Assembly: GCF_021869535.1 (NCBI RefSeq)
Contig: NW_026262582.1
Coordinates: forward strand, 28,582,001 to 28,646,000
DNA: 64,000 bases
Source: Mytilus californianus
Lineage: Eukaryota
Direction: 5' to 3'
Shown: positions 2,314-61,529 of the stretch, one piece after another
Position numbering within the stretch: the stretch's first letter is position 1
Layout of the letters: every line of letters starts with the position of its first letter
Notes under the pieces: generated by a model
What the model was told of the DNA's origin: nothing
What the model saw: the letters and a program-made list of their open reading frames with translations, nothing else
The model's database searches: none
Position numbers and translations under genes: made by a program

Positions 2314-3552
2314 GATGTAACAACGGCATTTTGATATGTTACAATGGTATTTTGATATGCAACAATTGTATTTTGATATGCAACAATGGTATTTTAATAT
2401 GTAACAATGGTATTTTGATATGTAACAATGGCATTTTGATATGTAACAATGGTATTTTGATATGTAACATTAGTATTTAAACATGTAACAATGCGGGTAT
2501 TTGAATATGTAACAATTGTATTTAATATGTAACAATGGTATTTTGATGTGTAACAATGGCATTTTGATGTGTAACAATGGCATTTTGATATGTAACAATG
2601 GTATTTTAACATGTAACAATGGTATTTTAATATGTAATAATGGTATTTTGATATGTAACAAAGGTATTTTAATATGTAACAATGGTATTTTGGTATGTAA
2701 CAATGATATTTTAACATGTTAGAATGGTATTTAAATATAATAATGGTACTGTTATATGTAACAATGGTAATCTGATATGCAATAATGGTATTTTAACATG
2801 TAACAATGGTATTTCGATATGTAATAATGCTATTTTTATATGTAACAAATGTATTTTAATATGTTACAATGGTATTTTGATGTGTAACAATGGCATTTTG
2901 ATATGTAACAATGGTATTTTAACATGTAACAATGGTATTTTAATATGTAATAATGGTATTTTGATATGTAACAAAGGTATTTTAATATGTTACAATGGTA
3001 TTTTGATATGTAACAATGGTATTTGATATGTAACAATGATATTTTGATATGTAACAATGATATTTTAACATGTTAGAATGGTATTTAAATATACTAATGG
3101 TACTGTAATATGTAACAAAGGTATTCTGATATGCAATAATGGTATTGTAACATGTAACAATGGTATTTCGATATGTAATAATGGTATTTTTATATGTAAC
3201 AAAGGTATTTTAATATGTTTCAACGGTATTTTGATATGTAACAATGGTATTTTGATATGTAACGATGGTATTTTGATATGTAACAATGACATTTTAACAT
3301 GTTAGAATGGTATTTAAATATAATAATGGTATTTTAATATGTAACAATGGTATTTTGATATGTAATAATGGTATTTTAATTTGTAACAATGATATTTTAC
3401 CACATAACAATGATATTTGAATATGTAACAATGATATTTTGATATATAACTGGAATATTAACATGTTAGAATGGTATTTAAATATAATAATGGTATATTA
3501 ATATGTAACACAGGTATTTTAGTATGAAACAATGATATTTTGATATGTAACA
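2314..3552. repeat. 21-bp minisatellite (tgtaacaatggtattttgata), about 1.24 kb
   Basis: Direct tandem array; explains the 7-aa periodic ORFs (CNNGILI, YHCYISK, KIPLLHI). Confidence 0.98.
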
Positions 3553-5492
3553 AATGACTCGCATCAATTGTGTTTTACAAATGGATTTAAAATATATGAA
3601 AAAAAACAATAAAACAATCTCCCCTAAACATGCATCCCCCCTCCTCCTGAAAAAAACCATGAAAAACACAACCCAAAATCAGAAAAGATCACAAAAAAAC
3701 TAACAAAATAAAAGTGCTAACCTTTAAACTTCATTGTTTTACACAAAGATTTTTTCCAATACGATATTGTGTAAAGTATAATCACTTGATGAATTTCATA
3801 AGTTTGTAATTACAGGAATAACACGACAGTTCTAAGTAGTGGAGCACTGCCGGCCCTTACAGGTCACCCTAGTTTACAATAATTATTTGTATGCTTTTCA
3901 CCATGTCATCCGTTTCTTTTCAAGTTTGCCTGAGTAGTTTCTGAAGGGTAAGCTGTTAGTTTGTATTGACATGAATTCAGAAATGTTAATGAATTACCAT
4001 GTTGAAGTTATTTAAAAAAGTTAATTAATAAGTAAACAGTTCATTCCTTCAGTACTTTCTTACAAGTGAAAAATTTATATTTACCCCTTCAACAAGAAGA
4101 AACAATATTACAGCCTTCTACAGCTGTGTATTTCTATTTTATAAAGTTTTACTTTTGTTACTAAGGAACAGCATCATTTATATATATTTCACCTACTGGC
4201 CAATGCCGTTTTTTTCAACGATTTTTTAAAATTTTAATTTCAAAAATCATGAAAAAAAAATAATTTGCCAGAAGAGAGGAGGAAGGTAAAAAGGGGATAT
4301 AAGAAACTCACAAATAGGAGGAAACTGACGACATCATTGAAAGGAACGAAAAACGCCAAAACGACTAACAAGTACATAAAACACTTCATAGAAAATCAAT
4401 GAAGGAGTAAAACGACCCCCCACTAGAAACCAGATGTGATCTCACTAAAATGCAAATTTCTCATTTATGCGGTGACGACGATTATCCTCATTTAATTATC
4501 CCGATTCGGAATCAGAAAAAAAACGAGATTTTGTGTATTTAATTTATGAAAGGGTATTAATTTTGACATAAGGGAAAACAAGGACGTAGTGTGACTGCCA
4601 TTGAAAAAAATATCCATCAGTGAAAACACTTATATGTTATAATTGTCAAATGTTATAATTTCATTGAAAATTTTTTGGCTTTCATGCAGAAACAAGATTT
4701 TTCCATACACGCTGTAGCACTTATTAGTCGATTTCGAAAAACGAAACTCGTCAAAGACATACCACAGTCTACAAAACACAATATAGAAAACTGAAGACTG
4801 AGCAACACGAACCCCACCAATAAGCATGAGATTATATATGATTTCTCATTCAAGTCCAACTTTTCTATACCAAATTAACTTACCGGTGCGTATGGATATT
4901 CAGCTGTATCTTGTGGAATATTGTGTACAGTTACGTTTCTTTAAATAACAAGTATATACAACATGTCTTCAATGAAAAATTTGTTCATAACACGTGTTCA
5001 TACATATTTATTTGAATTTGTACTGAACAAATAACCTATATGTTAAATGTTGTTGAGAAGGTAACTTGGTTCTTTTTTTTTTAAATGGCCATTGTTTCAA
5101 ATGTTACATGCGTACAACATGCACTTAAATGACGTTGGTTTCAGGACTAGAACAAGCATGACTGACGTACTTGAGACTTTGCCAAATCGTGCTTTCTTTA
5201 TAGACTACCTTCTATAAAATGAAATTTTTGGACATCAGCCATTTTTTTTCCTTTCAAAAAAAGGGGATATGTGGACATTTTTTCTTTTTGTAGATTTTTA
5301 AAGTAAAAAACAAACACATCTTGTAGCAATTTTAAAGAAAATAATCCTATTGGTTACCTTTTTTTCAATTTTTTGTTTATCTCTTTACTCATTTCAGGAT
5401 AATTTACTACTCAAGCATAACACTACAAGTTCTGCAGTATTGATTGATTGTTTTTTTTGTGTTTTAAGCCACTACATAGCTCTTGTTTATAT

Positions 5493-35200: not shown

Positions 35201-38200
35201 CATCATCGTTTTAAATAGGACCAACAAAACATATGCCATTAGTGATACATCAAATGTTTACCTTTCCGGAGCATCTGGTTTCAATTTCAGTTTTGAAATG
35301 GTTCAAGATACACGAACCTTGGTTTTCTGTGTAGTGTTTCGTGGACTGTTGTGCCACTTTTCGTCGTTTTTCTTTTGGCTTCTGATTTTTGCAGTTTGTT
35401 GTTCTACCTATGATTTTTATTTTTACACTATTTATTTATGTAAACAACGAAATACAAGATTTAATAAAATAACCTATTGAGACATATTCGAGTGACGAAT
35501 GAATACACTTGCTGAAAAACATTCAAATAACGAAATTAATTGTTGCATCATGATGGAAATTATATTAATTGTCAGTTGTGTTTGACGAAATAACAGAACT
35601 ACAATAAAACGTTATAGAAAGATAACCCCAAACTGATATGAAAAAGACGTAAAAAACAAGCAGGAAAAGAACATTTCCACATAAAATGAGAAAACTTGGA
35701 AATATAAAATGTACTTGTTTTTTTTTTAATATATGTTCCAGCAAATAATTAAACACATTAACAGTCGATATTGTATGAATTCCGTTTAGACAAGCATCAA
35801 CCAAATACCAAATACAATGATGTTAATAGCTTAAGAGCACCGTAAAACTCATCATCGTGTTTGTAGATATTGAAACAAATCCCAAAAAACTCCTGCCCCT
35901 TTAATAGCAGACCTTTTGTTTTGTAATGAAACCAATCATATGGCAAAACGGAATAAAGATTCCATTCCAACTAAAAGTCCTCCCTCAGAGGAACATATTA
36001 ACAAAAGCAAAAGGAAATCAACCTCCAATTCAAATTGCCGAAGCAAGGTTGTCGGCTGTTGAAACTTTTCCGAATTCCTGCGTTGGTCCCGAGTGTATAT
36101 TTTATCTTTCATTGTTATCATTTTTATCGATTATTTCAATTCGTCAATAACGTTACATTTCTCTCATGTAATTACTTACGCATATAATTCTTTGAGGACA
36201 TTTTCAACATCGTTAGGAACTTTAAAGTTTTTAAAATTCAGCCTTTCCAGTCCACAAAATTCCCTCCAGTCGTTATAGCTTGGTGTGCCCTGATCTCGCC
36301 CCCTTTGTATGTTAATGGACAATAAATCTGTATCTCCACCAAACAGCTTGTTACGCATTGCATTCACTCCAAAACTGTAATTGAAAATATTATATTGATT
36401 GATTGATTGAGTTTTTGTACTTTAACACCGCTTACAGCAGTGTGCGCTTTTCGTGGCGACCGGTTTTTATCAGTTGAGTAAGCCGGAGTGCCCTAAGACC
36501 CTAAGATAACCATCGACTTTCTGCAGGAAAACTGGCAATTCAAGTCAATGAAGAATGGAGTCAAACACCTGAAATGTGCGGGGCTAGAGCTCACAACCTA
36601 ATTGTTGACAGGCTGGTGATCGCAGTAGTTTAAATACTTATACCACTTGGAAAATATTATATTCAATAGGGGACATATTTTTGAAAGAGGTAGAAATAGT
36701 AAGAAATTACGGGAAATCATATGCATGCTTTCAAGGAACTTGTCTATTTCAATGATGTTATTCCGTATCTATAAAACATTTTCACCTCCATTATGAAAAT
36801 TATCCCCTCCCCTTTCAACATGGCTGCAATAACCACGAAAGAGCCTATTTAACAAAGAGTTCTTACCTGTCAATTCTATTAGCTGGTTTAAAGGTTAACC
36901 ATCGTATGAAATCTTCAACATTTTCGCCCATATTTGTTTGAATTAGATGTGGAGCCCTAAAGTTGTCAGCAAGAAGTTCAGTAGTGATAGTTTTGTAATC
37001 ATCTTCAAGCAATGACTGCTCCCTCATCGCTTGGGAATGTCCCATTCGAAAGGGTGCTACTGCAAAAGCGTTCCTTACAGAGGCATCAATTTTATCATTA
37101 TAACAGTCATCAAATCCATTTTTTGGGGTTTAAGCTTGTACTTTTTCATAGTTTGTGGAGATAGAATGGCAGGTAGGTACTCTTTATATGTTATGTGCTG
37201 CAATTCCGCTATGACTATTCTTCGTGTTTCTTCGAAAACTCTATCATTTCCCCATTCTGAATTGATTTGTTTCAGTAATTTAGCGATCCTGTTATGTTCC
37301 CTTACAAGAACAAGATGGTTTAATTGGAGACTAGGTGCCTGGTCAGTCCTTGAATCTCCTACATTGAAACAAATAAATAAGATGAAACTTTAAAAAACAC
37401 CTAGTTAAGTTTATTTTGTAATTTCACAGTCTCTCATGAACAAACAAAATTTTTTTTTATTGTCATGACGATAACAAATACTATTTTTAACAAAATTTTT
37501 TTTGATAAATTGCAGTTTTTCAACCTATTTCTATTAGAAAAAAATTATTGATTTATGAACCCTTACACTTATATCTAATAACCAACCGTTTTACTTGAGG
37601 GTTTGGATGAGGGGTCTTTCACTTTGTTATTAAATTTTGATGGTATTTTTACTTGTCTTTAAAAATAATGCTTATTCTTTTAAAATTCTCATGAAAATGA
37701 TTTAACCGTTTTTTTTCTGCAATTATTTGATTTCTTTATTCGAGTTATTCTGTACATCATTCATTTCTGTAATCAGTATTGTATAACCTAATTCTTATAT
37801 TTCCAAATTTGTTTTTTTTAAATTTTTTTGGACACCCTTTATTCCGTATTCTTTATTGTTTTGCTCATTTTCTCTATTCTTTATATTATTTGGTCTTTAT
37901 TCTCTATTCTGTAAACTTAAACCAGACCCTCTTACTTCTGGTGTGTTAATTATTACGTCACCAAAAGCATATTTTGCCCCACTATTGTAAAATTTAGGCA
38001 TGGACACGTACAACAAAACGCATTTCGTATAGAGGCGAACTAAAGATCACTGGAAGAAACAAAATCTAAACAATTACACCCTACTTCAACCAATTTCTTC
38101 TGATGAAATGATATGTGATAACACAATCATTCGATATGAAAAAACATAACATTTCATTTTGGAATACTATTTATTTCCTTACCCGTTAATTGGCAAAAAT

Positions 38201-41200
38201 CAGCTACTGGGTCTATCTTTACGCAAGATCCATTTACGTTCTCAGGTAAATTATTTCCAGGAGAAGTTTTTAAAAGTGCTGAAAATAAAAAAAGTAGTAT
38301 ATGTACCAGCTTCTATTTTCCTTTTGTCAACCTATTGAATACATTTGTTACTAAAAAAATCATTTATATCACGAAATACTAAGGATTTTCAACTCCAAGG
38401 AATATATTACTGTAGCTATATTTGGCAACACCTTTTGTAATTTTGGGTCCTCAATGCTCTTCATCTTCGCTAGCAAAGGGTAACGATCCGACCCGTTCCT
38501 CTTCAACTTAGGCGGATTAAGTAAGAATTTGTGATCAATGACGAAATGATTTCCATTGGACAAAGTTGTACCTAGCGGCATTCAATCAAATTGTCCTTAA
38601 AAATGGTAAATGTGTAAATAAAAAAAACATGTAACAATAAACAGTTGTTATGTGCAGATTGTGCAAATGGTCTTCATCCCCAAAACATTGAGCGGTATTT
38701 AGTGTCAGCTTTGAAGTTCTTAAACAACTTATTGAAAGTTCTTGAGTATTTTCGTCGTGCAGATGTTTGAATGCCGGTGTATATATGAGGTTTCTGTTTA
38801 ACGAAATCTGTAAACACTGGACACTTTTTAACACCTCCGAACTAAAGAGTACAAGTGGTGTTATTGGTCAATGATGATGTAGTCTACGTGGGCGTGACGT
38901 CATCTCTCACTACATTGCATTACGCTGTATACACAGATACTGTCTTAATCTGCAAAGGGTGAAGAGGATCGGGTCGGGTCGAAACTCTTGGCTAACGAAG
39001 ATAAATGCTCTTCATTTTCGTACTTTATTTGGCCTTTTAATTCTTTGGATTTGATCGTCACTAATGAGTTTTTTTCTAGACGAAACTCACTTTTGGCGTT
39101 CAACATGTGTAAGCCTGTATCTATGTTAAGTGGAATTATATTGCATAGAATCTTTTTGTTTTGTTGAAGAACATAATTATGTTGACATGCAGATATTTAT
39201 AGACATATTCCACGCTCATTTAACGCTTTGGGCGCATGCTATTTATGAAACATTTAATTCATATTTATACTGAATAGCGTAGGAAACGAGATATGAGAAT
39301 CCATACATTATTCTTTTTTTCATGAGTGACAGAATTAGGCGGCCACATTTAGACAAGTACCATCATTTATGCATGTTAAGTTCTGTACTTTTAAAAACTT
39401 ACATGAATCCGTAGTATCTCTAAGGGTTGCTAACTGTGCATCAGAACTACCATATACATGGCTGCAATCAATGTATGATGTCACATCGTTGATCTGTTCT
39501 CTATAATCTGAAATGAAAGGAGAAATCACGCTTATACGGAAGAGAATTGCATACCAAATACATTTTAGTTTCATACACACAGATATTTACACAGGAAAAG
39601 CAGACGTATTTGTTGGATATTCTTAAGTGCGTGGATTAGGTGAGCATTCACCATTTAAAGGCACAAACAATCACTTGTTTCCAATGTTATTTTTAGCATG
39701 TGTAAGGCGACAGTTGTTTACCGATGTACAAATCCTGTAATTCGATTAAGAAGTGACAAATTTAAGGCCAAACAAAAATAACCTAGAGAATCGCATGAAC
39801 TGAAAAGGGAACAAAACCGTGGTATGCGTATATTGGGCATGGCCAAAATAAGAAAAACATTTTCATTAAGATGAGCAATAAAGCTTTCAAATTTTAACTT
39901 AAACCTTAATTTAATTATGTTGAACCAGTTATACCAACTACATATGAAATGACTCTATCAAAGTAACGTTGTCAGTTTGTCGATATCACAATAGCAAAAC
40001 ATTTCTATTAACAATAAAATACTACGGAATTGACAATAGGTTTCGTCACACAATAATGTGGACTAAGGGCGCATGTTCTACGGAATTTACCATAGGCTTC
40101 ATCCCCCATTTTTTCCCCATAAAGCACTGGCTCAATACCACTGCTACTGGACTATCAGTCCCTTCCCGAGAGTATCATCAGCACAGTCATAAAAATTATC
40201 AAGAACTAAAGTTTAAACTGACTCACGCAAGTTGACCTCAGATGGATTAGGCTTTTTTTTAAGACCCTTTTTGGTAATATATCTCATATATAACTGTTTA
40301 GGTTCATATACATCCTTGACTTCCAAATATTCGGGTTCGAGTGTTCCTGATGAATGTATATTCAGAAAAGCGCTTTGAACGCAGTGAATTTATAAAGTGT
40401 TGTTTTTAATTTTTGTATACAAACCTTGGCTCAGTATATGAAAATAATATTTATAGAAAAGTAAACAATTTAAAATTTGTTAAAATGAAAACAAAAGAAT
40501 AATTATGTGGTTACGAATGGCACTTTAAGCAGTAGTTTCATTCAAAAAGCTCTTAATGGCAAGGCACTGTTGACTCTTTGTCTGCCTGTGTTTAGTTTCT
40601 TTTTTTGATTTTGCTTTCTGTTTTGAATAACTTCGATTTTCTTTAGATGAAGTCTTGTGCAGAAATATTGCAAATATGTTACTTGTTATATCGGGGGATC
40701 TTTCAGTCCTTTGAAAACTTCTGCATCCAGGGGTAAAATCTTTGTCGTCAGCAGGTATATCAAACGGGAAACATACATCGATGCTTTATAAAAAACAAAT
40801 AAAATAACACATGGTTTGATTAACAGTACAATAAATAAACTCATCATAGATACCAGGATTGACTTTTGTATTTGCGCCAGACGCTCGTTTCGACTAAAAA
40901 AGACTCATTAGTGACGATCGAATCAAAAAGAGTTAAAAAAGCCAAATAAAGTTGAAGAGCAAAACACATTTACAATTAAAACGACTTCATACATACGTAT
41001 GATTTATCATGTATAATGAAAAATTCAAATATCGATTGGGTAATTATGCTTAAATTAATGCTATTTTTTCTCTAAATTTGTATGCCATTATTCTCTATCT
41101 CTATAATATATATTTTAGCATCCCATTACTAGGTCTTTCTACTTTTCCGTGGAAAGACATTTTGCTTTTGCGTTTGTTCTGATAATTAGGTTTATCCATT

Positions 41201-44200
41201 TTTCTGTGCTTTTGTTCAGATTATTATAATCATTAAATTATTTAGAACTGTTTTGGTGTTTCAAATTATGTTGCCTACATATTTGATATATGATATTGAA
41301 CAGTAAATGCGCTTTTGAAACTGGCACCACCTAACCAAACACATTTTTGTAAGATTCGTTCCCTCGAACACTTTTTGTAAGAGTCGTCTTTTTGACCGAC
41401 GCTTTCTGGAGACTCCATATGAGAGGTATTTACCCTTCTGTATTTGAAATAAGTGAAATGAAATTGTAACCGGTAAACCAGAAGTTATAGAGGCATATAG
41501 TCCTTGGTCCACGGTAAAGAATGTAAGGTTACAGTTCGAGGTCATGTTCAAAATTTTGATTTCAACCTATCATATGAAACCAGAAGTGACATTTTTTAAG
41601 TAGCAATCATATCCTTATTTTAAGCAAAAGTTAAAAGAAACCATATATTTTTGGAATCAGCTTCAAGAAAGCTATTGTCTGATACTAGAAATGACATTTT
41701 AAACCCTATTTATTATCTTCACATCATAATATGTGCATTTTAAAGGAAAAGACCGTCATTTGTTCTCTGAACATTTGGTTTTTATTTAGTTTTTTTCAGC
41801 GTGATTGTTTTCTTTTTTGCTATTTTGTTGTTAAGCAAGATATCGCTTTGATATTTGGTGTATGGTATCGAACAGTTATACGCTTATGTAACTGACACCG
41901 CTTAGCCAAATAATTTTCTTTGTAAGAGTTATATCCCCAAACATTGTTTTCTTGTTATTTCTAATACGTCACATCTATAGAAGAAACAGACTAACCCATT
42001 TTTTTAAAATTGCTCGTTATACCCTAAAGATGTTCTGTTTAATTTTGTCTAAATCAGTATAGAGATTGGTTTTTAATTATATATTCAGTTGTTATTATTT
42101 GCCTATTTGCTCGTTATTCTCTATTTTTCGACCAATATTTTTTATTGTGTAAACTCATATCAAATTCTAACCATCTGTATGTGTTTTCTACTTACTCATT
42201 ATTTTCACAGCATTTCAGATCTGAAATTTTAGATGAATGAATTAATGAATAAATAAATGAAGTATATACAGTGTGTGTCAAGGTAGAATGTTTACCACAA
42301 CGGAATCTACATGTTAACATTGTAAAAAAAAAAAAGATACTATTATAATAAAATTAAAATTGACGTTCATACCGCAGTTTTGGTGTGAACATACCATGCA
42401 AATTTTAACAAAATTTTCCGACAGACATTTTAGGTAAATTTCAGCGGTCTGCCCGTTTTCCTTTATATGATACCTTTAGAACTATTCAACCGAAACTTTT
42501 CAAATCTTAGTTTGTTGGTTGAACTTTTATCATGATTTGTTTTAACACCAAATAGAAATATTTTAAGAACATTTCCTACATTTGTGATTTTTTTTTCATT
42601 TATTAAATTCAAGTTAAACTTCTACGGTGAATGAAGCTATTTATGATAAGTATATCCCTACTGTAAAAGTTTTTAATTATGATAATACCACGTTCATTCG
42701 TTTAAAAATTTCATTGCATAAAACTGTAGGAAAAAAATTGAAAAAAATTCCCCATATAAGAAGAAGGCAACTGAAAAATCAAGACCAAAGAAAGAGAAAG
42801 ACGTGCTATTTATTATGAAATTTTGTATGAAACTCCTATTAACATCTATATATCAAGGTTTTAAAAAGGACATAAGTATAAAATACATATATATGTTAAA
42901 TATAATAAATTATCTGTGGCAGTTGTCGTCCGATATTTTGGTTTACACATACCTCTCTTTACTTGTGTCTTTATTAAATCATGGGTAAGTGCTTGTCCAA
43001 AAGCAAAATGCTGACCAGACAGTGTCGGAGACGCTTGGTCGTTAGGTCCTAATTCGTCTGCCATTAGTTTGTTGCTTATCAGTCTAGGGCTTGGTAAATT
43101 ACTTGGAAATCCACCTCTTGGACTATTATCTTCTGCAATGGAGTCTAAACGTATTACACTTATTATATAAAATCGGAACGTATTACACTTAAATCGACGG
43201 TATTACCCTTAAATCGATACGAATTACACTTAAGTCGGAACATATTACACTTAAATCGATACATATTTCACTTAAATCGGTACGTATAACATTTAAATCG
43301 ATATGTATTTCACTTTAATCACAACATACAGGTTGATATACATGTTAAATAAATTGTTCATGCATTTATCGTAGAATATGATTTCTTTGTCTAACCTGCG
43401 GGAAAATATTTATCAACCACTTAAATTTGTGAATGATTCAGCAGACTTTAAAATTCTTAAAAGAATTCTAAAATTTTCAAAACAAATTGTTTATCACCTA
43501 ATTTGTGTAAAAAAAGAATGTTTCGTGCGTGGAATATTTTTTTAATCGTCTTGCATTCACATTAAATGTGTGAATGTGTACAAAACCGTTATATTGGTGT
43601 AACGTGTGCTTCTTTTGTTGAATGAGTAAAATAAGAGCTTGAAAAAACGCGCGTGAGGTGCAAATACACTATTTCAATCCTGGTATCAATGATGAGTTTA
43701 TTTACAGTATTCAAGTCATGTTACTTACCATCGTAATCAATAATGAGATTTCCATTATATTCAAGTCATGTGACTTACCATTGTAATCAATCCTGAGATC
43801 ACCATTATAATCAAGTCCTTTGACTTACCATCGTAATCAATCATGAGATCACCATTATATTCAAGTCATGTGACTTACCATCGTAATCAATCATGAGGTC
43901 ACCATTATATTAAAGTCATGTGACTTACCATCGTAATCAATCATGAGATCACCATTTTATTCAAGTCATGTGACTTACCATCGTAATCAATAATGAGATC
44001 ATCATTATATTCAAGTTATGTGACTTACTATCGTAATCAATAATGAGATTTTCATTATATTCAAGTCATGTGTTTTACCATCGTAATCAATCATGATTTT
44101 TCCATTATTTTCAAGTCATGTGACTTACCATCGTAATCAATAATGAGATTTCCATTATATTCAAGTCATGTGACTTACCATCGTAATCAATCATGAGATC

Positions 44201-46020
44201 ACCATTATGATCAAACCGTCTTTGTGCCGTATTTGCTTTCCCCCATGATGGGTAGATCAGGTTATTACACGATCCGTCATACGTCCTATATTTGGCATTA
44301 GTGGGACAGGATGCGTGTACTGGAAGAAAATAACAAAACAAACTCCCAAACATCTGTTTTAAAAGAAACTTAAAAATGCACAAATACATGAAATAATTAT
44401 CAAAAGGTACCAGGTTTATAATTTGATACGCCAGATGCGCGTTTCATCTACATAAGATTCATAAGTGACGCTCACAAAAACGACAAATAATTGAACACAC
44501 AAGAGGCATCAATACCTGATTGCTATGTTATTAGATCCAAATGGGTGGAGTCTGTCGGTTGAAAGGAAATTTCGAATACATTGTCTAAATGGCTTATTTT
44601 GAGATAATCGTTGTGTTCAAGTCGTCTTTGCATTGTGGTGTGATACATTTACCCGTCATGGGTTGAATATGTTGAAAGAAACACACAAAATGACATAGAT
44701 TTTAACTCATAAGAAGTTTGAATATGTTTTTGCAGCTTTATTATTAATTCCAAGTGGTGCTTAAAAAAAATTCGTAGCATAATGGTATTTTTTCTTTGTT
44801 CTTCGATTGAGTAAACCAGTTATTCTACATATTTTAGAGGAGTTCATTTATTGAATTGATTTTTGTTAGAGCATTATCCAAGCCCGCTTCTAATAGGAAA
44901 ATAGAAAAGAATAGGAGGATTCTAAACCAGGGTATTAACTTTCATCTCAGAAGCGGCTATGCGCTGTATTGATCCGCTTCATTGAACTGGTGAACAATGA
45001 ACGAAAACAAACCCAACAAAACGTTACAGTAATAAAAATTCAAACTCCTTAACCTAGCTCTAAATTAAATCCTGACTCTGTAAACTTGAAGAAAATGAAC
45101 ATTCGAGGGGAGCAGGATCTTCAGGAATTTTCTCCATTTCACAAAGTTCGTTTCTTGTGAATTAGGCATGCTCTAAAAATATTTGTCGCTGGGTGAGCAA
45201 TCTTAGCTGACATTATAGGTTAATGTGTTAATAGGTCCAGCAGCCAAAACTGTGTAAACATACACTACAGACATACAACACATCTGACAAAAATACAAAC
45301 AAAAATATATACCAATAAAGCTAAAAAAAAAAACCTTAACAAAAAATGTATTATTTTAGTTGATAGTAAATTTGACAAAGACGCCCACAAATGTTTTTTT
45401 TTGTAGTCGATCATTCATACAGTATATAATATACACTTTTTCTGTAAAGTATGAATTAAATAAAACATAAATACAAGGGTAAAGAAAATGAAAGCAACGC
45501 TGTTAAAACCTCTCTAGTACGAATTGCGCATAAAAAGACCCACTTGCACCAGGACAGCACACAGCACCAAAACCCAATTGCTCCATCCAAGTCACAATTT
45601 GTAAAAGTAAACCATTATTGGTCAAAGTACGGTCTTCAACCCGGAGCCTTGGATCAAACCGAACAGCAAGCTATAAAGGGTTAAAACAATTACTAGTGTA
45701 TAACCATTCAAACAGAAAAACCAACGGTCTAATCTATATAAAAAAACGAGAAACGAGAAAACACTTATGAACCACATCAACAAACGACAACTACTGAACA
45801 TCAGACTCCTGACTTAAGACAGGTGCAAACAAATGCAGCGGGTTTAAAAGTTTTAATAGGAACAAACCTTCATCCTTATATGAACAAATATCGTTACATC
45901 ACAAAATAGAAAGCCTATCTTATATTTTTAGTGAAGTCGACCCTGGCATAATTTCTTACCTTGAAAAATAACATTGTAAAACAGCCACGAAAACACAAGA
46001 AAAGTCAAACTCCCCATCAT
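32188..46020 (-). CDS. Secreted animal heme peroxidase (peroxidase-cyclooxygenase superfamily; chorion peroxidase/peroxinectin-like), 12 coding exons, ~587 aa, with a 1-nt frameshift in exon 8
   Basis: Hand-spliced translation gives a signal peptide, then [27 protein letters not shown] (distal His), [22 protein letters not shown] (distal Arg), REHNRIA, FRMGHS (proximal His), [49 protein letters not shown]. All 11 introns are GT..AG with matching phases. Exon lengths 61,141,192,25,101,105,96,492,195,167,106,82 sum to 1763, one short of 588 codons. Confidence 0.93.
33483..33588 (-). CDS. Peroxidase exon 11
   Basis: tttttctttcag|CACAG...AAAAG|GTAAAT; [35 protein letters not shown]; 106 nt. Confidence 0.9.
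33808..33851 (-). ncRNA. Minimal type I hammerhead ribozyme, intact core, inside a ~175-bp retrozyme-like repeat (33775-33950)
   Basis: The minus strand reads GCGUCA-CUGAUGA-GUG-uuuugua-CAC-GAAA-C-GUGC-GUC/UGGCGC. Stem I (6 bp), stem II (3 bp), both core boxes and a GUC cleavage triplet are present. Confidence 0.88.
34720..34952. repeat. Degenerate ~55-bp tandem array near the start of intron 10
   Basis: Recurring (t)gaaca(c/t)a(a/g)atcca(t/c)atgatt...ccata motif, 4-5 copies, ending about 20 nt from the donor at 34970-34971. Confidence 0.7.
34972..35138 (-). CDS. Peroxidase exon 10
   Basis: attgttaag|TTCTG...AAAG|GTATGA; [55 protein letters not shown]; 167 nt. Confidence 0.93.
36180..36374 (-). 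CDS. Peroxidase exon 9
   Basis: caattacag|TTTTGG...TATGC|GTAAGT; [42 protein letters not shown]...KELYA; 195 nt. Confidence 0.93.
36867..37358 (-). CDS. Peroxidase exon 8 (distal Arg, proximal His), frameshifted at 37119-37128
   Basis: caatgtag|GAGATTCAAGG...GACAG|GTAAGA; [11 protein letters not shown]...REHNRIA...YKLKPQK, then after a shift GFDDCYND...FRMGHSQ...NRID; 492 nt where 493 is needed. Confidence 0.92.
38183..38278 (-). CDS. Peroxidase exon 7
   Basis: ttttattttcag|CACTT...ACGG|GTAAGG; [33 protein letters not shown]; 96 nt. Confidence 0.92.
38462..39003. mobile_element. Mutator-like MITE with a 9-bp TSD, nested in a retrozyme-like repeat in intron 6
   Basis: Imperfect ~45-bp TIRs (atcttcgctagc...cctcttca / tgaagaggatc...gctaacgaagat); TSD aatgctctt at 38453-38461 and 39004-39012. 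Confidence 0.85.
39403..39507 (-). CDS. Peroxidase exon 6 (Ca-binding loop region)
   Basis: tttcatttcag|ATTAT...TCAT|GTAAGT; [35 protein letters not shown]; 105 nt. Confidence 0.93.
40340..40383 (+). ncRNA. Probable degenerate hammerhead of a second family
   Basis: GUGUUC-CUGAUGA-augUauauuca-GAAA-A-GCGC-UUU/GAACGC. Stem I pairs, but stem II and the triplet are non-canonical. Confidence 0.5.
40683..40783 (-). CDS. Peroxidase exon 5
   Basis: ttttataaag|CATCG...ACAA|GTAACA; [33 protein letters not shown]; 101 nt. Confidence 0.88.
40835..40965 (-). mobile_element. Degenerate hammerhead retrozyme-like repeat (others at 44405-44475 minus, 38411-39125 plus)
   Basis: Same family as the 33.8-kb copy, with CUGAUGA changed to CUAAUGA or CUUAUGA. 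Confidence 0.8.
42196..42220 (-). CDS. Peroxidase exon 4, 25-nt microexon
   Basis: aaaatttcag|ATCTGAAATGCTGTGAAAATAATGA|GTAAGT; DLKCCENND. Supplies the expected Cys-Cys and reconciles phase 1 with phase 2. Confidence 0.85.
42953..43144 (-). CDS. Peroxidase exon 3 (distal His)
   Basis: tttag|ACTCC...AGAG|GTATGT; [28 protein letters not shown]...[16 protein letters not shown]; 192 nt. Confidence 0.93.
43147..43322. repeat. 21-bp minisatellite (acgtattacacttaaatcgat), about 8 copies, abutting the exon-3 acceptor
   Basis: Read directly from the sequence; starts 2 nt from the AG at 43145-43146. Confidence 0.9.
43709..44208 (-). repeat. 50-bp minisatellite, 10 copies, made from the exon2/intron2 junction
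   Basis: The unit tgacttaccatcgtaatcaatcatgagatcaccattatattcaagtcatg recurs at exact 50-bp spacing from 43721 to 44171. Confidence 0.97.
44179..44319 (-). CDS. Peroxidase exon 2
   Basis: ttttcttccag|TACAC...GATG|GTAAGT; [47 protein letters not shown]; 141 nt. Confidence 0.92.
45960..46020 (-). CDS. Peroxidase exon 1 (signal peptide)
   Basis: ATG ATG GGG...CAA G|GTAAGA encodes [20 protein letters not shown]; the phase-1 donor joins exon 2 to give V-H-A-S-C-P, a plausible AxA-like cleavage site. Confidence 0.8.
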
Positions 46021-48159: not shown

Positions 48160-48535
48160 ACTGTTAAATATCAAATTGGAACCGAGAAATGTCATATTAG
48201 AACTAAGAATTGTCAACTTGGACGTGAGAATTGTCAACTCACAACTAAGAACTTCCAACTTGGAACTGAGAAACGTCAAGTTAGAAGTGAGATATGTCAA
48301 CTGAGAACTAAAAAATGTCAATTTAAAAGTCAGAAATATCAACTTGGAACTAGGAATTGTCAACTTGGAACTTAGAACTGTCAACTCACAACTAGGAAAT
48401 GTCAACTTGGAACTGAGAAACGTAAAGTTAGAAGTGAAGAATGTCAACTTAGAACTAAAAAATTGCCAACTTAAAAGTAAGAAATATCAACTTGGAACTA
48501 ACAAATGTTAACTTGGAACTGAGAAATATCAATTT
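48160..48535. repeat. 21-bp minisatellite (aatgtcaacttggaactgaga); paralogues at ~53560-53650 (shortened) and ~59010-59375
   Basis: Tandem array giving CQLGTEK-type ORFs; present in each duplicated unit. Confidence 0.92.
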
Positions 48536-56350: not shown

Positions 56351-59300
56351 AGGTGTGAATATACCACGTTTTTCCATAATGGAATAAAAGATTGAAACTC
56401 GCTGCCAGAAATAGTTAAAAGTGGTTCAAAGAAATATACTTTTAAAATACAAGTAAAACAAATGTTGATGGATAAATTTAAATCCATCTCTAATAGTGAA
56501 TTTGTTTTATATTAATTTCATTGAAGCTTTGAGCCTTTGTGTGTGATAATTTTGAATGATTTTTGTTATTTATATGTGTTAAGCTTGGTGTGAACTGGTA
56601 GTCTCTTCCTAAAAGGACCCCACTGGAAAAAGGTTTCAATAACTTGTGTGGATCATACATAGGTTTTAGGCTGCAGTGAAAATCTAGTCCATTTAAAATT
56701 ATTACAGTTTAGTCAAATATTAAAATAATGAAAATTTCCATAATTATATATTTTAAATTATGATTTTTAGTGCTTATAACTGTAAATCCTTTAAGTGCCT
56801 GTATCTGTAAAATCCTTTTCATGACCATCGCTAGATTTGTATGTCATTTTATTTTAATGTGTCTGTCAATTGCATGCCTTTTATCTTGAATAGATATTAT
56901 TATAAAATATGCTTCACAGAATATAATTTACATTTTAATTTGAATAAACATTCTGATTGAGTGTTACAGCGCTTGAAACATAACATCCTCTTATATTCAT
57001 CATTAGTTACCTTGGAAAAATCAACATGAAATTTACATCATGAAAGAATAATTCGTAATTTTTCGAATAATTACAAAAACAAAATTAGACATTAAGGAGG
57101 GGACGGTTAGTTGATTTTAAATTAAGTCTTATTTATGATTTATCTAAAATGAAGATTTTGAAACACTCATCAAAAGTCGATTAGATATATAGTATCCTGT
57201 TCGTTAATTGCATCAATCCATCGACAGTTGTTTTTTTTTAGTTCACACATTCTTTATATTATCATGATAATTGTATCATCATAAGTGTAAATATTAGGGA
57301 CTTTCTGTTTTGAAATTTCCTCGGTGTTCAGTATTTTCGGGATTTTATTTTTTTCATATATATTTTATAAAATTGTGAAATGAATTTGTCTATGGGTAGA
57401 TCAGACGTTTTTCTTCAACGAAACTAAATCACTTGATATTACTCCTGTGAAATATCAGAAAATGTTAAAATTTGTCGTCTTTTTATTCCATATTAATAAG
57501 TAACACAGTGTTATAGTGGCCCTATACGATTTATTCTGAGACATTTAATTTTATTTGGAGTGAGAGCGAGCGGTGGTGGAGCATCTAACTATTGAGAAAG
57601 TGTTTGTAAAGTAACTTTACGGGTATGAATATTATTATGCGTTTTGTTGATTTATTAACTTAAAGTACAATTATAGCATTTTATTCTTTGCAGTCAGGAT
57701 TTACTTCGTCAAAATCATCTTGCCATCACGCCATTAATTTTCAAGTGCGATTGCTCACATGACGGTTGTTTTTAGAAAAAAAATATATCTAGTTGCCATT
57801 AAGCATAATTTAGTATATTTTTTTGTCAACTTTAAAATATTGCCTGATCGGTTAACAGGATAAATTTATGAAACGTACACAAAAAAATATCTGATTAAAT
57901 AATAATTTGCGGAAGGGCAGACTACAATTTTTCAGAGATTGAAGACACAAGTCGTTAAGTGGTTTTAGTAAAAAAATGTTATTCGAACACACCTTCTCTG
58001 GTGTTTTGGCTTCTTCATTAGAAAGTTTTTACTTGACTGTTATATATCATTTGTTTTGTATTTTTTTAATGTTATATTATGTATATGACCATGTATATTA
58101 CGCCTGAACATGAAGAAACTGTACCCGAATTTCTCTTTTCGATGAGATTATTGCAAATTTTTTTTCACGCAAAAAACTGTTACGGGGGGAGATATGCAAA
58201 TTCATGCTTTAAAAAGATTAATCTTTTATCTTTCTGTAGATTTTGTCGATGGAATTTATGCGTTTGGACAAAAAAGATCAACATGTATTTCCATCAGGTA
58301 CTTTAAACGCCTGTTCTGTGAAAATTTGTCTCTAATTAAAAAGTTAAAAAACATATATCTTGAAGTTCAACACTATAATTTACATAATGTTGTACATGAA
58401 TTATCATTGCTATGGTTAAAATTATAAATTAACTGTTACCAAAACTTTAAATTTTGGAAATACTAAGGCTTTTCTAACTGCGGAATAGATTACCATAGCT
58501 GTATTTGGTAAAACGTTTAGGAATATTTGTTTTTCAATGCTCTTCAACTTCGTTCTTTATTTGACCTTTTTAACTTTTTTTTTATTTGAGCGTCACTGAT
58601 GAGTCTTTTGTAGACGAACACGCGTCTGGCGCAAATTCAAAATTTCGATCCTGATATCTATGATGAGTTTATTCAAGTATTCACATGTATATAAGATGCA
58701 AAATAATCTAAATTACGCACCTACATCAAACTTTTAAAGCCCGTAGACAAAGATGTAAACAATTCAAATATACTGAGTTGGCCATTTATACATTTTCTAA
58801 AAAAGAATTCCATTTCTTTAGTTTAATTTCAACTGGGTATCAGCCTTTTTTTAAAAAATTATTTTGGATTCAATAATACATATTACCATTTCACACCAAT
58901 GCAATTTTTTTTTCTTAAAACACAAATTTTGTGATAGCACTGTAATTATTTATGTTTGACATTTCCCAGTTCCTAATTGAAAGTCTGAAACGTAATCTTG
59001 TAACTGTGAAATATAAAATTGGCACCGAGAAATGTCATATTAGAACTAAAAATTGTCAACTTGGACGTGAGAATTGTCAACTCACAACTAAGAACTTTCA
59101 ACTTGGAACTGAGAAACGTCAAGTTAGAAGTGAGATATGTCAACTGGGAACTAAACAATGTTAATTTAAAAGTCAGAAATATCAACTTGGAACTAAGAAT
59201 TGTCAACTTGGAACTTAGAACTGTTAACTCACAACTAGGAAATGTCAACTTGGAACTGAGAAACGTAAATTTAGAAGGAAGAATGTCAACTTATAACTAA

Positions 59301-61529
59301 AAAATTGCCAACTTAAAAGTAAGAAATATCAACTTGGAACTAACAAATGTCAACTTGGAACTGAGAAATATCAATTTCTATTTTTGTGACTTCAAACCCA
59401 TTCCTTAATGAATTTTATTTTCAGTTTTCCTACCGATTGTTGTTGATTCCCTCCTTTTACTCCAGCTTCCTCCACCAATTAAAATTGTTTGTCATGATAC
59501 AGCAAATAGTGCTGAAAGTGGCGTTAAACACCAACAATCGATCAACGATTTTATACATATTTACTTTCCATGATGTCCGATAATTTAAAAAAAATCAATT
59601 TTTAAATCCACTTTAAAAATTTCTTTTTACTTTTTCTAATTTCTTATTAAGGTCTTTCCTTTCACTAGAAGGAAAGACCTTACTGTATTTCTTCTGATTA
59701 TTATTCTTTTTGTTCCGCCAAACTTTGACAAAATTTCCCTTCGTAACCGTAAGCCGTGTCGCTTTCAGGTTCACACTTTGTATCGGTGTCATAAATTCCT
59801 ACCCGGAACTCACCCTGTGAGTCGTAAAATTTTGTCGGTCCGGAGTTATCTCTCCAAAACCTAAAAACCTTGTTATCATTCAAACACCGTAATTGTAATA
59901 GGTACAAAAAAACGAAGGGTGAAATTTGTTCAGGACCAGACCCTGGTTCTTCGTTACATTTGGATCGAAAAGATTCAATGACTCATTGGTAGGGTTATGC
60001 CCCTATGAAAATTAACAGATGTCGGTTGGCCACTAAAACTCAGAAACCGTAAGTTTTAGACACCTAGGATCTTCACCAATCATCATCAATTCATGTGACT
60101 TTGAAAAATTCCTCAAGGTCAAATGTGTATGTTGAGCTTTACCTCTGACCTAACACCTTGTTATGGGATAATCTCAGCAACCTTAATACTTACAGAAGTG
60201 TTGAATAGTGAAAAATGTTTGGGTCACTTATGTACAACTTTGTTACATTTGACCGAAGAGATTTGACCTTTCTGTAAGGGGCATAACCTTTGTTTTAGGT
60301 TTCTGAAAAGACAAAATCAACTTTTACTATATAACCAAAGGTCCTAGACCCATGGGGGCTTCAACAATGATATTGGGGACTTAACCTTGACAAAGGTCAC
60401 AAGGTCAAAGGTCAAGGTCATGTCCCAGATAGCAAATTATGTGTTTTTGACCTTATATAAAGGATTTAAAGTGTGTTTTAAAGGTTTTTAAGGTTAACCT
60501 TGACCTTTGACCTTACAACTTTTTATTGGATATCTCAAAAACGATAATACTTACAGAAAAAGTAAATAGTGAAAAATGTTTGGGTCATTGCGTCGCAAGT
60601 TTTTAACATTTTGACCGAAAAGATTTGACCTATCCTTATGGAGCATAACCCCGATAACGGTTTTTGACAAGACAAAATTAGCTTTAACTCTTGATCCAAA
60701 GGTCCTAGACCCATGGGGTTATTTTTTAATAACATCGTTTACCAATGACCTTCACAAAGGTCAAAAGGTCAAAAGTCAAGGTCATTTCCTAAATAGCGAA
60801 TTTGTTGTTTTTGTCATATATTAACAGTTTTATGTGTGTTTGAGAGCTTTCCAATGCATTCTACGTCTATTGGAACATGTATTTTACATTTCGAAAAGGA
60901 AAGACCTCTCAATTGTTCAAAAACAATTGACATTTTAATTTTTCAATATATTTTGTTACTTTTGATAGCTGATATGAGGAGGCAATTCTTGTTCCACTTG
61001 TCGTAACCGTCTTTTAATTTATCCTGTTTGTCAAAAGTTGTACAAGAAAAATGTTTTATTTTTAAATACCGTTATTTTAAGATGATCTCGATCTGTATTT
61101 TCAAGGATATATAAACTTGAAATTAGCAAAGAGTTAAATATTGCATTCTATCATATGTAGAAGCTAAATACTCAATGATACTTAACTTTATTAACAATAT
61201 TAATGGTACAAATAAGACTGGAAATCATGTTCAAATATCATGTAAAACTGCAAAATCATACAATTAAAGTAGTGAAATTGATGAAAATAACAAAAATTCA
61301 AAACAATTTTCGAATATTTTTTAAATTTTAAAAATTTGGGATCCCAAAAGATCCTAAATCAGATCCAAATATAGTTCGAAATATTGATAACAAAAAATTA
61401 TCAAATGCTTTTCTTTACAACAATAGATAGCTGCAAAGTTAGTAAACAAAATACCAGGTGCAAATGGTTTGTATAGTGCCACTACAAATATTGAAAAATC
61501 TTATTATGTTCAGAGAAGGAAATCTGATA

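What the first reader, a model, noticed from the sequence alone, without database searches (positions are those of the whole stretch)
43709..44208. A splice donor amplified into a 10-copy, indel-free 50-bp array
The repeat unit is the last ~30 nt of peroxidase exon 2 plus the first ~20 nt of intron 2. The pre-mRNA therefore carries ten successive donors (GATG|GTAAGTC) at 44178, 44128 ... 43728. Eight are full consensus, one has -1 G>A (44029) and one is GTAAAAC (about 44078). The second donor adds 50 nt and shifts the frame; all later ones lie beyond the in-frame stop at 44111-44113. Only the first donor yields protein. Inference: copy number could act as a rheostat diverting transcripts to NMD, or the array could work as a U1 snRNP-loading enhancer. 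A VNTR built from a functional splice site is unusual.
Basis: partly seen in the sequence, partly recalled or inferred. Interest (0 to 1): 0.75.

Follow-up and report, generated by a model that had tools for sequence, protein, structure and literature searches.

The report
Splice-donor "mirage" minisatellite in mussel peroxidase
In a California mussel peroxidase gene, the end of exon 2 and its splice signal are copied ten times in tandem; the repeat is real and old, being shared by five mussel species with 3 to about 14 copies, but it belongs to a known kind of repeat ("mirage", as in human F7 intron 7) whose extra signals probably lie unused in the intron.

Summary
Window 43709-44208 (minus strand) is ten indel-free 50-bp units. 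Each unit is the last 30 nt of exon 2 of an animal haem peroxidase plus the first 20 nt of intron 2. Eight units carry the identical donor ATG|GTAAGT. Only donor 1 keeps the reading frame.

- **Correction:** homology puts the acceptor at 43133 (exon 3 starts at 43132), not 43144.
- **Not an artefact:** the genome is Mytilus californianus. Orthologues in M. coruscus (~14 units), M. galloprovincialis (3 and 4 units in two assemblies), M. trossulus (3) and M. edulis (3) carry the same array at the same junction.
- **Age:** units shared between species show the expanded array predates the californianus/coruscus split.
- **Origin:** single-copy paralogues have a (T)TGAATA direct repeat 51 bp apart around the junction, which fits a microhomology-mediated first duplication.
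- **Splicing:** every annotated orthologue joins exon 2 to exon 3 from donor 1. The coding sequence is under purifying selection (omega about 0.2).
- **Selection on decoys:** I found no signal that the decoy donors are either preserved or destroyed.

This is a known class: "mirages" in amphioxus, and human F7, IFI6, CBS, LMNB2 and PDGFA. This scan has already reported many mirages elsewhere in this genome. The reference copy also carries a 1-nt frameshift in exon 6.

The parts
45960..46020 (-). Exon 1 coding part (signal peptide, [10 protein letters not shown]...IFQ). It ends in phase 1 before a GTAAGA donor.
   Evidence: tblastn of P0152 and P0303; sequence read.
44179..44319 (-). Exon 2 (141 nt), encoding ...[17 protein letters not shown]...MIDYD. 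Its last 30 nt form the start of repeat unit 1.
   Evidence: Pfam PF03098 positions 1-26. The boundary position and phase 1 are shared by at least 10 paralogues and by the orthologous proteins.
43709..44208 (-). Ten tandem 50-bp units: the 'mirage' minisatellite.
   Evidence: TRF; unit table.
44177..44178 (-). GT of the authentic donor (donor 1), ATG|GTAAGT. It forms 7 contiguous base pairs (-1 to +6) with the canonical U1 5' end.
   Evidence: The U1 genes of this genome begin ATACTTACCTG.
43727..44128 (-). Span holding the nine decoy donors. Their GTs begin at 44128, 44078, 44028, 43978, 43928, 43878, 43828, 43778 and 43728. Seven carry the 9-mer ATG|GTAAGT, one is GTAAAA and one is ATA|GTAAGT.
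44111..44113 (-). TGA in the exon-2 frame, inside unit 2. It terminates any product made from donors 3-10.
   Evidence: ORF 44111..44389; frame table.
43133..44178 (-). Intron 2 (1046 nt). 450 nt of it are decoy units.
43170..43320 (-). Second minisatellite in intron 2 (21 bp x 7.2). It ends 36 nt upstream of the acceptor. The same repeat sits at the same place in paralogue B and in other species.
   Evidence: TRF.
43133..43134 (-). AG of the acceptor supported by homology (ccattgcag|AAGAT).
   Evidence: Conserved in paralogue B. The proteins read DYD|(D/E)DNSPRGG.
42953..43132 (-). Exon 3 ([23 protein letters not shown]...[11 protein letters not shown]).
   Evidence: Pfam positions 37-91.
37119..37124 (-). 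A6 run in exon 6, one base shorter than in every paralogue and orthologue. It shifts the frame ahead of the FRMGH (proximal His) motif, and the shifted frame stops at 37075-37077.

Best explanation
This is a boundary-spanning ('mirage') minisatellite. A 50-51-bp segment covering the last 30 nt of exon 2 and the first 20 nt of intron 2 was first duplicated in tandem. The likely cause was slippage or unequal exchange between a pre-existing 6-7-bp direct repeat, (T)TGAATA, that brackets exactly that segment in the single-copy paralogues. The duplicated segment then gained and lost units like any VNTR. The first unit keeps the ancestral exon end and donor. The other nine units lie inside intron 2 and are removed with it. 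Inferred, not shown: the spliceosome uses donor 1 almost exclusively, as in human F7 intron 7. The proposed reasons are 5'-to-3' oriented selection and definition of the 141-nt exon 2. Any leak to a decoy would give an NMD-prone mRNA with a premature stop. On this reading the array is a tolerated, essentially neutral by-product of a minisatellite-rich genome, not a regulatory device.
For: - **Structure and frame:**
- **Not a dispersed repeat:** the own-genome search finds only this locus and one single-copy unit in paralogue B, 100 kb away.
- **Microhomology:** TTGAATA lies 51 bp apart in paralogue B, and TGAATA 51 bp apart in the more distant paralogue C (dS about 0.6). The array in the window starts and ends at this motif.
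- **Ancestral boundary:** the junction position and phase are shared by at least 10 paralogues.
- **Same array in orthologues:**
  - M. coruscus L056, about 14 units
  - M. galloprovincialis L031, 3 units, and L057, 4 units
  - M. trossulus L058, 3 units
  - M. edulis L059, 3 units
- **Old expansion:** the last two M. californianus units carry the same private variants (ACAATG, GTAAGTAA) as the last two M. coruscus units.
- **Donor 1 in annotation:** all five annotated orthologous proteins, including RefSeq XP_063417265 and XP_076088293, read MIDYD|(D/E)DNSPRGG.
- **Purifying selection alongside the array:**
  - omega 0.17-0.29 in all orthologue pairs
  - calA branch: 5 synonymous vs 4 non-synonymous changes, with about 3.8 times more non-synonymous sites
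  - the M. coruscus orthologue with about 14 units has no stop or frameshift in the stretches aligned to P0152
- **No selection signal on decoy motifs:** 25/326 vs 111/1484 mismatches, p=0.9.
- **Rate near background:** junction arrays occur at 2 of 42 paralogue exon-2 junctions. Minisatellites cover 5.95% of this window.
- **Precedent:** in human F7 IVS7 only the most upstream of 5-9 identical donors is used, and mirages do not disturb splicing in amphioxus (PMC1557585, PMC3087553).
Against:
- **These donors are far stronger than the F7 ones.** They pair with U1 over 7 contiguous bp and sit 50 nt apart. That is the regime in which duplicated strong sites splice almost wholly from the intron-proximal, most downstream site in vitro and in HeLa cells (PMC3413131). 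Consensus-strength pseudo-sites also did compete in the F7 system.
- **In IFI6 and CBS the two nearest pseudo-sites are used**.
- **GT is unchanged in all 37 decoys** (0/74 positions). This could hint at constraint, although the units are not independent.
- **The reference M. californianus copy has a frameshift in exon 6**. In this individual the gene may be null.
- **No protein for this gene appeared in the database searches**.
Confidence: 0.66

Rival explanations
1. Leaky decoys act as a dial. A meaningful fraction of transcripts splice from decoy donors, all of which give premature stops, so unit number (3 to about 14) sets how much mRNA is lost to NMD.
For: Seven decoys are identical in the 9-mer to the real donor and share 30 nt of exonic context. 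Strong duplicated 5' splice sites at least 45 nt apart favour the downstream site in vitro and in HeLa cells (PMC3413131). The proximal pseudo-sites are used in IFI6 and CBS, and the CBS VNTR is associated with enzyme activity (reference list of PMC1557585). Copy number differs strongly between clades and within M. galloprovincialis.
Against: All annotated orthologues use donor 1. The coding sequence stays under purifying selection with 10-14 units present since before the californianus/coruscus split. Decoy motifs show no excess conservation. No RNA data were available.
Confidence: 0.15
2. U1-loading element. The decoys are not spliced but recruit extra U1 snRNPs. These would raise the efficiency of donor 1 or protect the intron from premature cleavage and polyadenylation.
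For: The U1 5' end is canonical, and each decoy can form 7 contiguous base pairs with it. Two U1 snRNPs can sit on one pre-mRNA with two strong sites (PMC3413131). GT is unchanged in all 37 decoys of seven arrays.
Against: Decoy 9-mers as a whole vary as much as the rest of the unit. The +5 G>A weakening recurs in many units. Paralogues B and C and dozens of other family members do without any array. Edulis-complex species keep only 2-3 weakened decoys.
Confidence: 0.05
3. The M. californianus copy is a recently dead gene, so what the decoys do to its mRNA no longer matters. The array is then a relic drifting in a pseudogene.
For: A 1-nt deletion in an A-run of exon 6 shifts the frame ahead of the proximal-His motif. 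It is unique to this assembly among eight compared copies. No protein of this gene appears in two database searches. A second M. coruscus copy (L032, 8 units) is clearly decayed, with 2 stops, frameshifts and omega about 0.4.
Against: There is only one defect. All splice sites are intact. There are no stops, and omega is about 0.2 on the calA branch. The orthologue in M. coruscus, with an even longer array, has no stop or frameshift in the aligned stretches. The deletion could be a heterozygous null allele or a homopolymer error. This reading also does not explain the array in the other species.
Confidence: 0.12
4. Assembly artefact: the true copy number is lower or the array is a mis-join.
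For: None found. It could not be checked with reads.
Against: Nine of the ten units differ from each other by 1-9 substitutions, unlike an artefactual expansion. Arrays at the same junction occur in six other assemblies of four other species. The last two units correspond one-to-one with those of M. coruscus.
Confidence: 0.02

Closest known systems
Human F7 intron 7 minisatellite (37 bp, 5-9 copies; Borensztajn et al. 2006, PMC1557585)
   Same: The first unit spans the exon/intron boundary, so the authentic donor is followed by identical pseudo-donors. Copy number is polymorphic. The downstream sites would give non-functional mRNA. In F7 only the most upstream site is used.
   Different: The F7 unit takes only 4 nt of exon, against 30 nt here. 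The F7 donor is weak (UGG|gugggu), whereas these are near-consensus (AUG|GUAAGU, 7 bp to U1). Splicing was measured for F7 and not here. This one is in a mollusc and is conserved in position across five species.
'Mirage' minisatellites of amphioxus (Adh3, globin genes BflGb6 and BflGb9; Ebner et al. 2010, PMC3087553)
   Same: They are tandem duplications of an exon-intron boundary inside an invertebrate gene. Unit number varies between haplotypes. Edge units escape homogenisation. Regular splicing is apparently undisturbed.
   Different: Amphioxus units are 10-160 bp and often involve acceptors. No cross-species series of copy number or microhomology origin was described in the text I read.
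Human IFI6 (6-16) intron 2 and CBS intron 13 minisatellites (cited in PMC1557585)
   Same: They are donor-reiterating minisatellites at an exon/intron boundary.
   Different: There the two nearest pseudo-sites are used constitutively. From my own memory of the literature, not read here, the IFI6 unit is 12 nt and so in frame. Here the 50-nt unit shifts the frame, and a stop lies in unit 2.
Duplicated strong 5' splice sites in model pre-mRNAs (Hodson et al. 2012, PMC3413131)
   Same: Two or more high-affinity U1 sites at least 45 nt apart compete for one acceptor.
   Different: Those are artificial constructs, and the intron-proximal site wins. That rule, applied here, would predict use of donor 10 and loss of the protein, which the selection data argue against.
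Other junction-spanning arrays in this genome
   Same: A distant peroxidase paralogue (L016, G000:C88:135547.6-135548.8 kb) has about 14 units of 78-91 bp. Each unit is built from the exon-2 end plus a GATG|GTACGT donor at the homologous junction. Earlier notes of this scan list many more.
   Different: These are independent events with unrelated unit sequences. The 78-nt unit of L016 is a multiple of three.

Membership tests
Boundary-spanning ('mirage' / F7-type) minisatellite | Head-to-tail tandem array of a 10-200-bp unit | tested here: met
   TRF: period 50, 10.0 copies, 0% indels.
Boundary-spanning ('mirage' / F7-type) minisatellite | The first (or last) unit contains the authentic exon-intron junction | tested here: met
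   Unit 1 is the last 30 nt of exon 2 plus 20 nt of intron. The boundary is fixed by at least 10 paralogues and 5 orthologous proteins.
Boundary-spanning ('mirage' / F7-type) minisatellite | The splice-site consensus is reiterated within the intron | tested here: met
   Nine decoy GTs, seven of them with the identical 9-mer.
Boundary-spanning ('mirage' / F7-type) minisatellite | Unit number varies between haplotypes or taxa | tested here: met
   3, 3, 3, 4, 10 and about 14 units in orthologues of five species. Two M. galloprovincialis assemblies differ, 3 vs 4. Not tested within M. californianus.
Boundary-spanning ('mirage' / F7-type) minisatellite | mRNA made from the authentic site; pseudo-sites silent or nearly so (typical, not strictly defining) | not testable with these tools
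The only indirect support is annotated orthologues joining from donor 1.
Regulated unproductive splicing (alternative 5' site coupled to NMD) | Transcripts spliced from the alternative sites exist and carry premature stops | tested here: inconclusive
   Premature stops are predicted for all nine decoys. The existence of such transcripts was not tested.
Regulated unproductive splicing (alternative 5' site coupled to NMD) | Conservation of the alternative sites beyond the neutral level | tested here: not met
   Decoy 9-mers have 7.7% mismatches vs 7.5% elsewhere in the unit, p=0.9. GT is unchanged at 0/74 positions, but the units are not independent.
Dispersed satellite or transposon-borne repeat that happened to supply a donor | Copies of the unit elsewhere in the genome | tested here: not met
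   The own-genome search gives only this locus and the single unit of paralogue B.
Animal haem peroxidase (PF03098) gene | Pfam domain over the curated cut-off on the exons, with the proximal-His motif present | tested here: met
   Four exon pieces score 28.6-56.7 bits against a cut-off of 25. FRMGH is present but lies downstream of a 1-nt frameshift in this assembly.

The most novel reading that the evidence does not exclude
This array, with its 3-to-14-unit series across Mytilus, is a natural experiment that sets two published rules of 5' splice-site choice against each other. One rule says the most upstream site wins by oriented scanning (F7). The other says the intron-proximal site wins when sites are strong and at least 45 nt apart. 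Here the sites are near-consensus and 50 nt apart. Two outcomes would be new. First, molluscan spliceosomes might pick donor 1 exclusively even against 9-13 equally strong downstream sites, which would show that exon definition or scanning overrides occupancy-based choice in vivo. Second, decoy use might rise with unit number, so that the Pacific clade (10-14 units) expresses less productive mRNA than the edulis complex (3-4 weakened units). That would be a heritable expression dial.
Probability: 0.12. Interest if true: 0.6.

Novelty: new member of a known kind. Interest (0 to 1): 0.3.

Why it matters
As one instance it is ordinary: a further example of a described repeat type, and this scan has already met many in the same genome. 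Its value is as a well-characterised case.

- The donors are near-consensus, unlike the weak sites of F7.
- The origin by microhomology can be read from the single-copy paralogues.
- Orthologues give a graded copy-number series, 3 to about 14, over a known phylogeny, with the coding sequence still under selection.

This makes it a convenient natural substrate for asking how a spliceosome chooses among many identical strong donors, and whether such arrays carry a fitness cost. It also warns annotators. Ab initio models in M. coruscus read through the repeats as coding sequence (P0165, P0168).

Tried and rejected
1. **RNA and DNA reads.** There are no junction counts, no read check of copy number and no read check of the exon-6 frameshift.
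2. **Read-through ORF search.** I searched the 92-aa ORF that reads through from exon 2 into unit 2, hoping to find alleles in genomic contigs. Nothing was found.
3. **Dispersed repeat or transposon origin.** Rejected: the unit occurs nowhere else in the genome except once in paralogue B.
4. **Assembly artefact.** Rejected on unit diversity and on six other assemblies.
Rejected in favour of 43132.
6. **Selection on decoy donors, for or against.** No signal within the window (3/90 vs 27/410, p=0.33) or pooled over seven arrays (p=0.9).
7. **A shared ancestral frameshift.** I first took L032 (P0165) for the M. coruscus orthologue and considered a frameshift shared with calA. The cluster look-up showed that the true orthologue is P0303/L056, which has no frameshift there, and that L032 is a separate decayed copy.
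8. **Arrays next to exon 2 in paralogues L041 and L044.** They are purely intronic and do not span the junction.
9. **Programmed frameshifting or transcriptional slippage at the A-run.** Considered only as a thought. There is no evidence for it, and I did not pursue it.
10. **Joined exon model.** Inside one script exon 2, with added units, was placed before exon 3 only to read the frame.
Full report
**1. What is there**

On the minus strand, window 44208-43709 consists of ten head-to-tail units of exactly 50 nt. TRF gives period 50, 10.0 copies, 90% matches, no indels and score 792. The sequence was read and cut into units. The units differ from their consensus at 30 of 500 positions. Each unit is 30 nt of coding sequence (...NGDLMIDYD) followed by G|GTAAGTCACATGACTTGAAT.

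The 9-mer ATG|GTAAGT is identical in eight units. Unit 3 reads GTAAAA. Unit 4 has A at -1 (44029).

**2. The gene**

Pieces of the minus strand match the Pfam family An_peroxidase, PF03098. A homologue from the representative search and its relatives gave the exon map:
- exon 1: 46020-45960
- exon 2: 44319-44179
- exon 3: 43132-42953
- further exons near 40779, 39505, 38282, 37362-36867, 36376, 35137, 33583 and 32271

Intron 2 is 1046 nt, and 450 nt of it are decoy units.

The acceptor is the AG at 43134-43133. The motif ccattgcag|AAGAT is conserved in the neighbouring paralogue.

Frame consequences:
- Only donor 1 is in frame.
- Donor 2 gives a stop in exon 3.
- Donors 3-10 lie beyond the TGA at 44113-44111.

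In one search, exon 2, with added units, was placed before exon 3 inside a script only to read the frame.

**3. Whose genome**

Proteins named Mytilus californianus sit on a contig of 80,295,649 bp. That is the length of G000:C2, which holds the window. The gene belongs to a large family, with at least 48 exon-2-like matches.

It lies in a local cluster of three copies:
- A: the window gene.
- B: 100 kb downstream.
- C: just upstream of the window.

The exon-2/intron-2 boundary and its phase are the same in at least 10 paralogues. Donor 1 is therefore the ancestral site.

**4. Origin**

The unit is not a dispersed repeat. The whole-genome search finds only this array and a single copy in paralogue B.

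In B, the motif TTGAATA occurs once in the exon and once in the intron, 51 bp apart, bracketing exactly the segment that is repeated in A. In the much older paralogue C (dS about 0.6), TGAATA occurs at the same two places, also 51 bp apart. The array in A begins and ends at this motif.

I infer that the first duplication arose by slippage or unequal exchange between these short direct repeats. Later gains and losses followed the usual minisatellite route.

**5. It is real and old**

The cluster that holds the best homologue (P0152) contains the orthologues from four other species. Their loci all carry the same array at the same junction:

| Species | Locus | Units |
|---|---|---|
| M. coruscus | L056 | about 14 |
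| M. galloprovincialis | L031 | 3 |
| M. galloprovincialis | L057 | 4 |
| M. trossulus | L058 | 3 |
| M. edulis | L059 | 3 |
| M. coruscus, second decayed copy | L032 | 8 |

- Unit types are shared across species (GGTGAT, GGAAAT, GGTAAT).
- The last two M. californianus units carry the same private changes as the last two M. coruscus units (ACAATG; GTAAGTAA).
- A three-unit state therefore goes back to the common ancestor of these species.
- The expanded state predates the californianus/coruscus split (dS 0.054).
- The two M. galloprovincialis assemblies differ by one unit, so it is a true VNTR.
- These data exclude an assembly artefact.

**6. Does it matter to the gene?**

- **Annotation:** all five annotated orthologous proteins, two of them RefSeq models, join exon 2 to exon 3 from donor 1.
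- **Selection on the coding sequence:** omega is 0.17-0.29 in every orthologue pair. On the branch leading to the window gene there are 5 synonymous and 4 non-synonymous changes, with about 3.8 times more non-synonymous sites.
- **Orthologue state:** the M. coruscus orthologue with about 14 units has no stop or frameshift in the stretches aligned to P0152.
- **Decoy motifs:** they vary as much as the rest of the unit, 3/90 vs 27/410 in the window (p=0.33) and 25/326 vs 111/1484 over seven arrays (p=0.9). This gives no sign of selection to keep or to kill them.
- **The GT dinucleotide:** it is unchanged in all 37 decoys. The units share ancestry, so I do not read this as constraint.
- **Rate of junction arrays:** they occur at 2 of 42 examined exon-2 junctions of the family. 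That is close to the 5.95% of this window covered by minisatellites, as expected if such duplications are tolerated. Both numbers are small samples.

**7. Comparison with what is known**

Borensztajn et al. (PMC1557585) describe the human F7 intron-7 minisatellite. It has 37-bp units in 5-9 copies, and its first unit spans the boundary. Only the most upstream of the identical donors is used. They list further human cases: IFI6, CBS, LMNB2 and PDGFA. In amphioxus the same structures are called 'mirages' and do not disturb splicing (PMC3087553). The window's array meets every structural criterion of this class.

It differs in donor strength. The U1 genes of this genome start ATACTTACCTG, so each site can form 7 contiguous base pairs, and the sites are 50 nt apart. 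For such strong sites at least 45 nt apart, model substrates splice almost wholly from the intron-proximal site (PMC3413131). In the F7 system, pseudo-sites of perfect consensus did compete.

Published rules therefore do not predict the outcome here. The selection data and the annotations favour donor 1.

**8. What could not be done**

The rheostat and U1-loading ideas are therefore neither supported nor excluded.

**9. Caveat on the reference copy**

Exon 6 of the window gene has an A-run (37124-37119) that is one base shorter than in both paralogues and in all orthologues. This shifts the frame ahead of the proximal-His motif. It is the only defect. It may be a null allele, a very recent loss or a homopolymer error. 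No protein of this gene turned up in the database searches.

**10. Earlier notes of this scan**

After I had reached the F7 comparison, a word search showed that other agents had filed many junction arrays of this genome as 'mirages'. That gave me the term and led me to PMC3087553, which I read myself. I did not test their loci.

**Verdict**

The feature is real, old and well defined. It is a new member of a known kind, and its function is most likely none.

Noticed in passing
L016 1599-2721 (= G000:C88:135547667-135548789): A distant peroxidase paralogue has an independent junction-spanning array at the homologous exon-2/intron-2 boundary. It has about 14 units of 78-91 bp, each holding ...YPEWGKSFTPQ..IPAQY.DG plus a GATG|GTACGT donor, and most units keep the GT. 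Orthologues in M. edulis, M. trossulus and M. galloprovincialis are annotated as joining YEDG|IDYPRD from the first donor. An M. coruscus ab initio model (P0168) reads the repeats as protein.
   Followed up: partly
window 37119-37124 (minus strand): A 1-nt deletion in an A-run of exon 6 shifts the frame of the window's peroxidase ahead of the FRMGH motif. It is unique among eight compared copies. The decayed M. coruscus copy (L032) has a different 4-nt deletion and an A10 run at the same spot, so the site is indel-prone.
   Followed up: partly
window 43170-43320; L004 240-670; L031 6352-6500; L032 6889-7016: A 21-bp minisatellite (cgatttaagtgtaatacgttc) lies just upstream of the intron-2 acceptor in gene A (7 units), paralogue B (20 units) and the orthologues. 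Each unit contains tttaag, a possible weak acceptor. An M. coruscus ab initio model (P0165) appears to start exon 3 upstream of the usual acceptor, near this repeat.
   Followed up: no
L032 (M. coruscus GCA_011752425.2, CACVKT020007550.1:310275-334440): This is an extra A-like peroxidase copy about 100 kb from the true orthologue. It carries 8 units, two of them 54 nt long, together with two in-frame stops, frameshifts in exons 2 and 6, and omega about 0.4. It is a decaying duplicate that kept its array.
   Followed up: partly
G000:C165:31974814-32006668: At least 20 U1 snRNA genes lie in a tandem array with a 1324-bp period, nearly all with the same score. A second, looser cluster lies on C1 near 49.39-49.43 Mb.
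   Followed up: no
window 2315-3553, 48166-48532, 59028-59374: Other long 21-bp-period minisatellites occur in the window (59, 17 and 16 units). Overall, 5.95% of the window is in arrays with period at least 10 and at least 3 copies.
   Followed up: no
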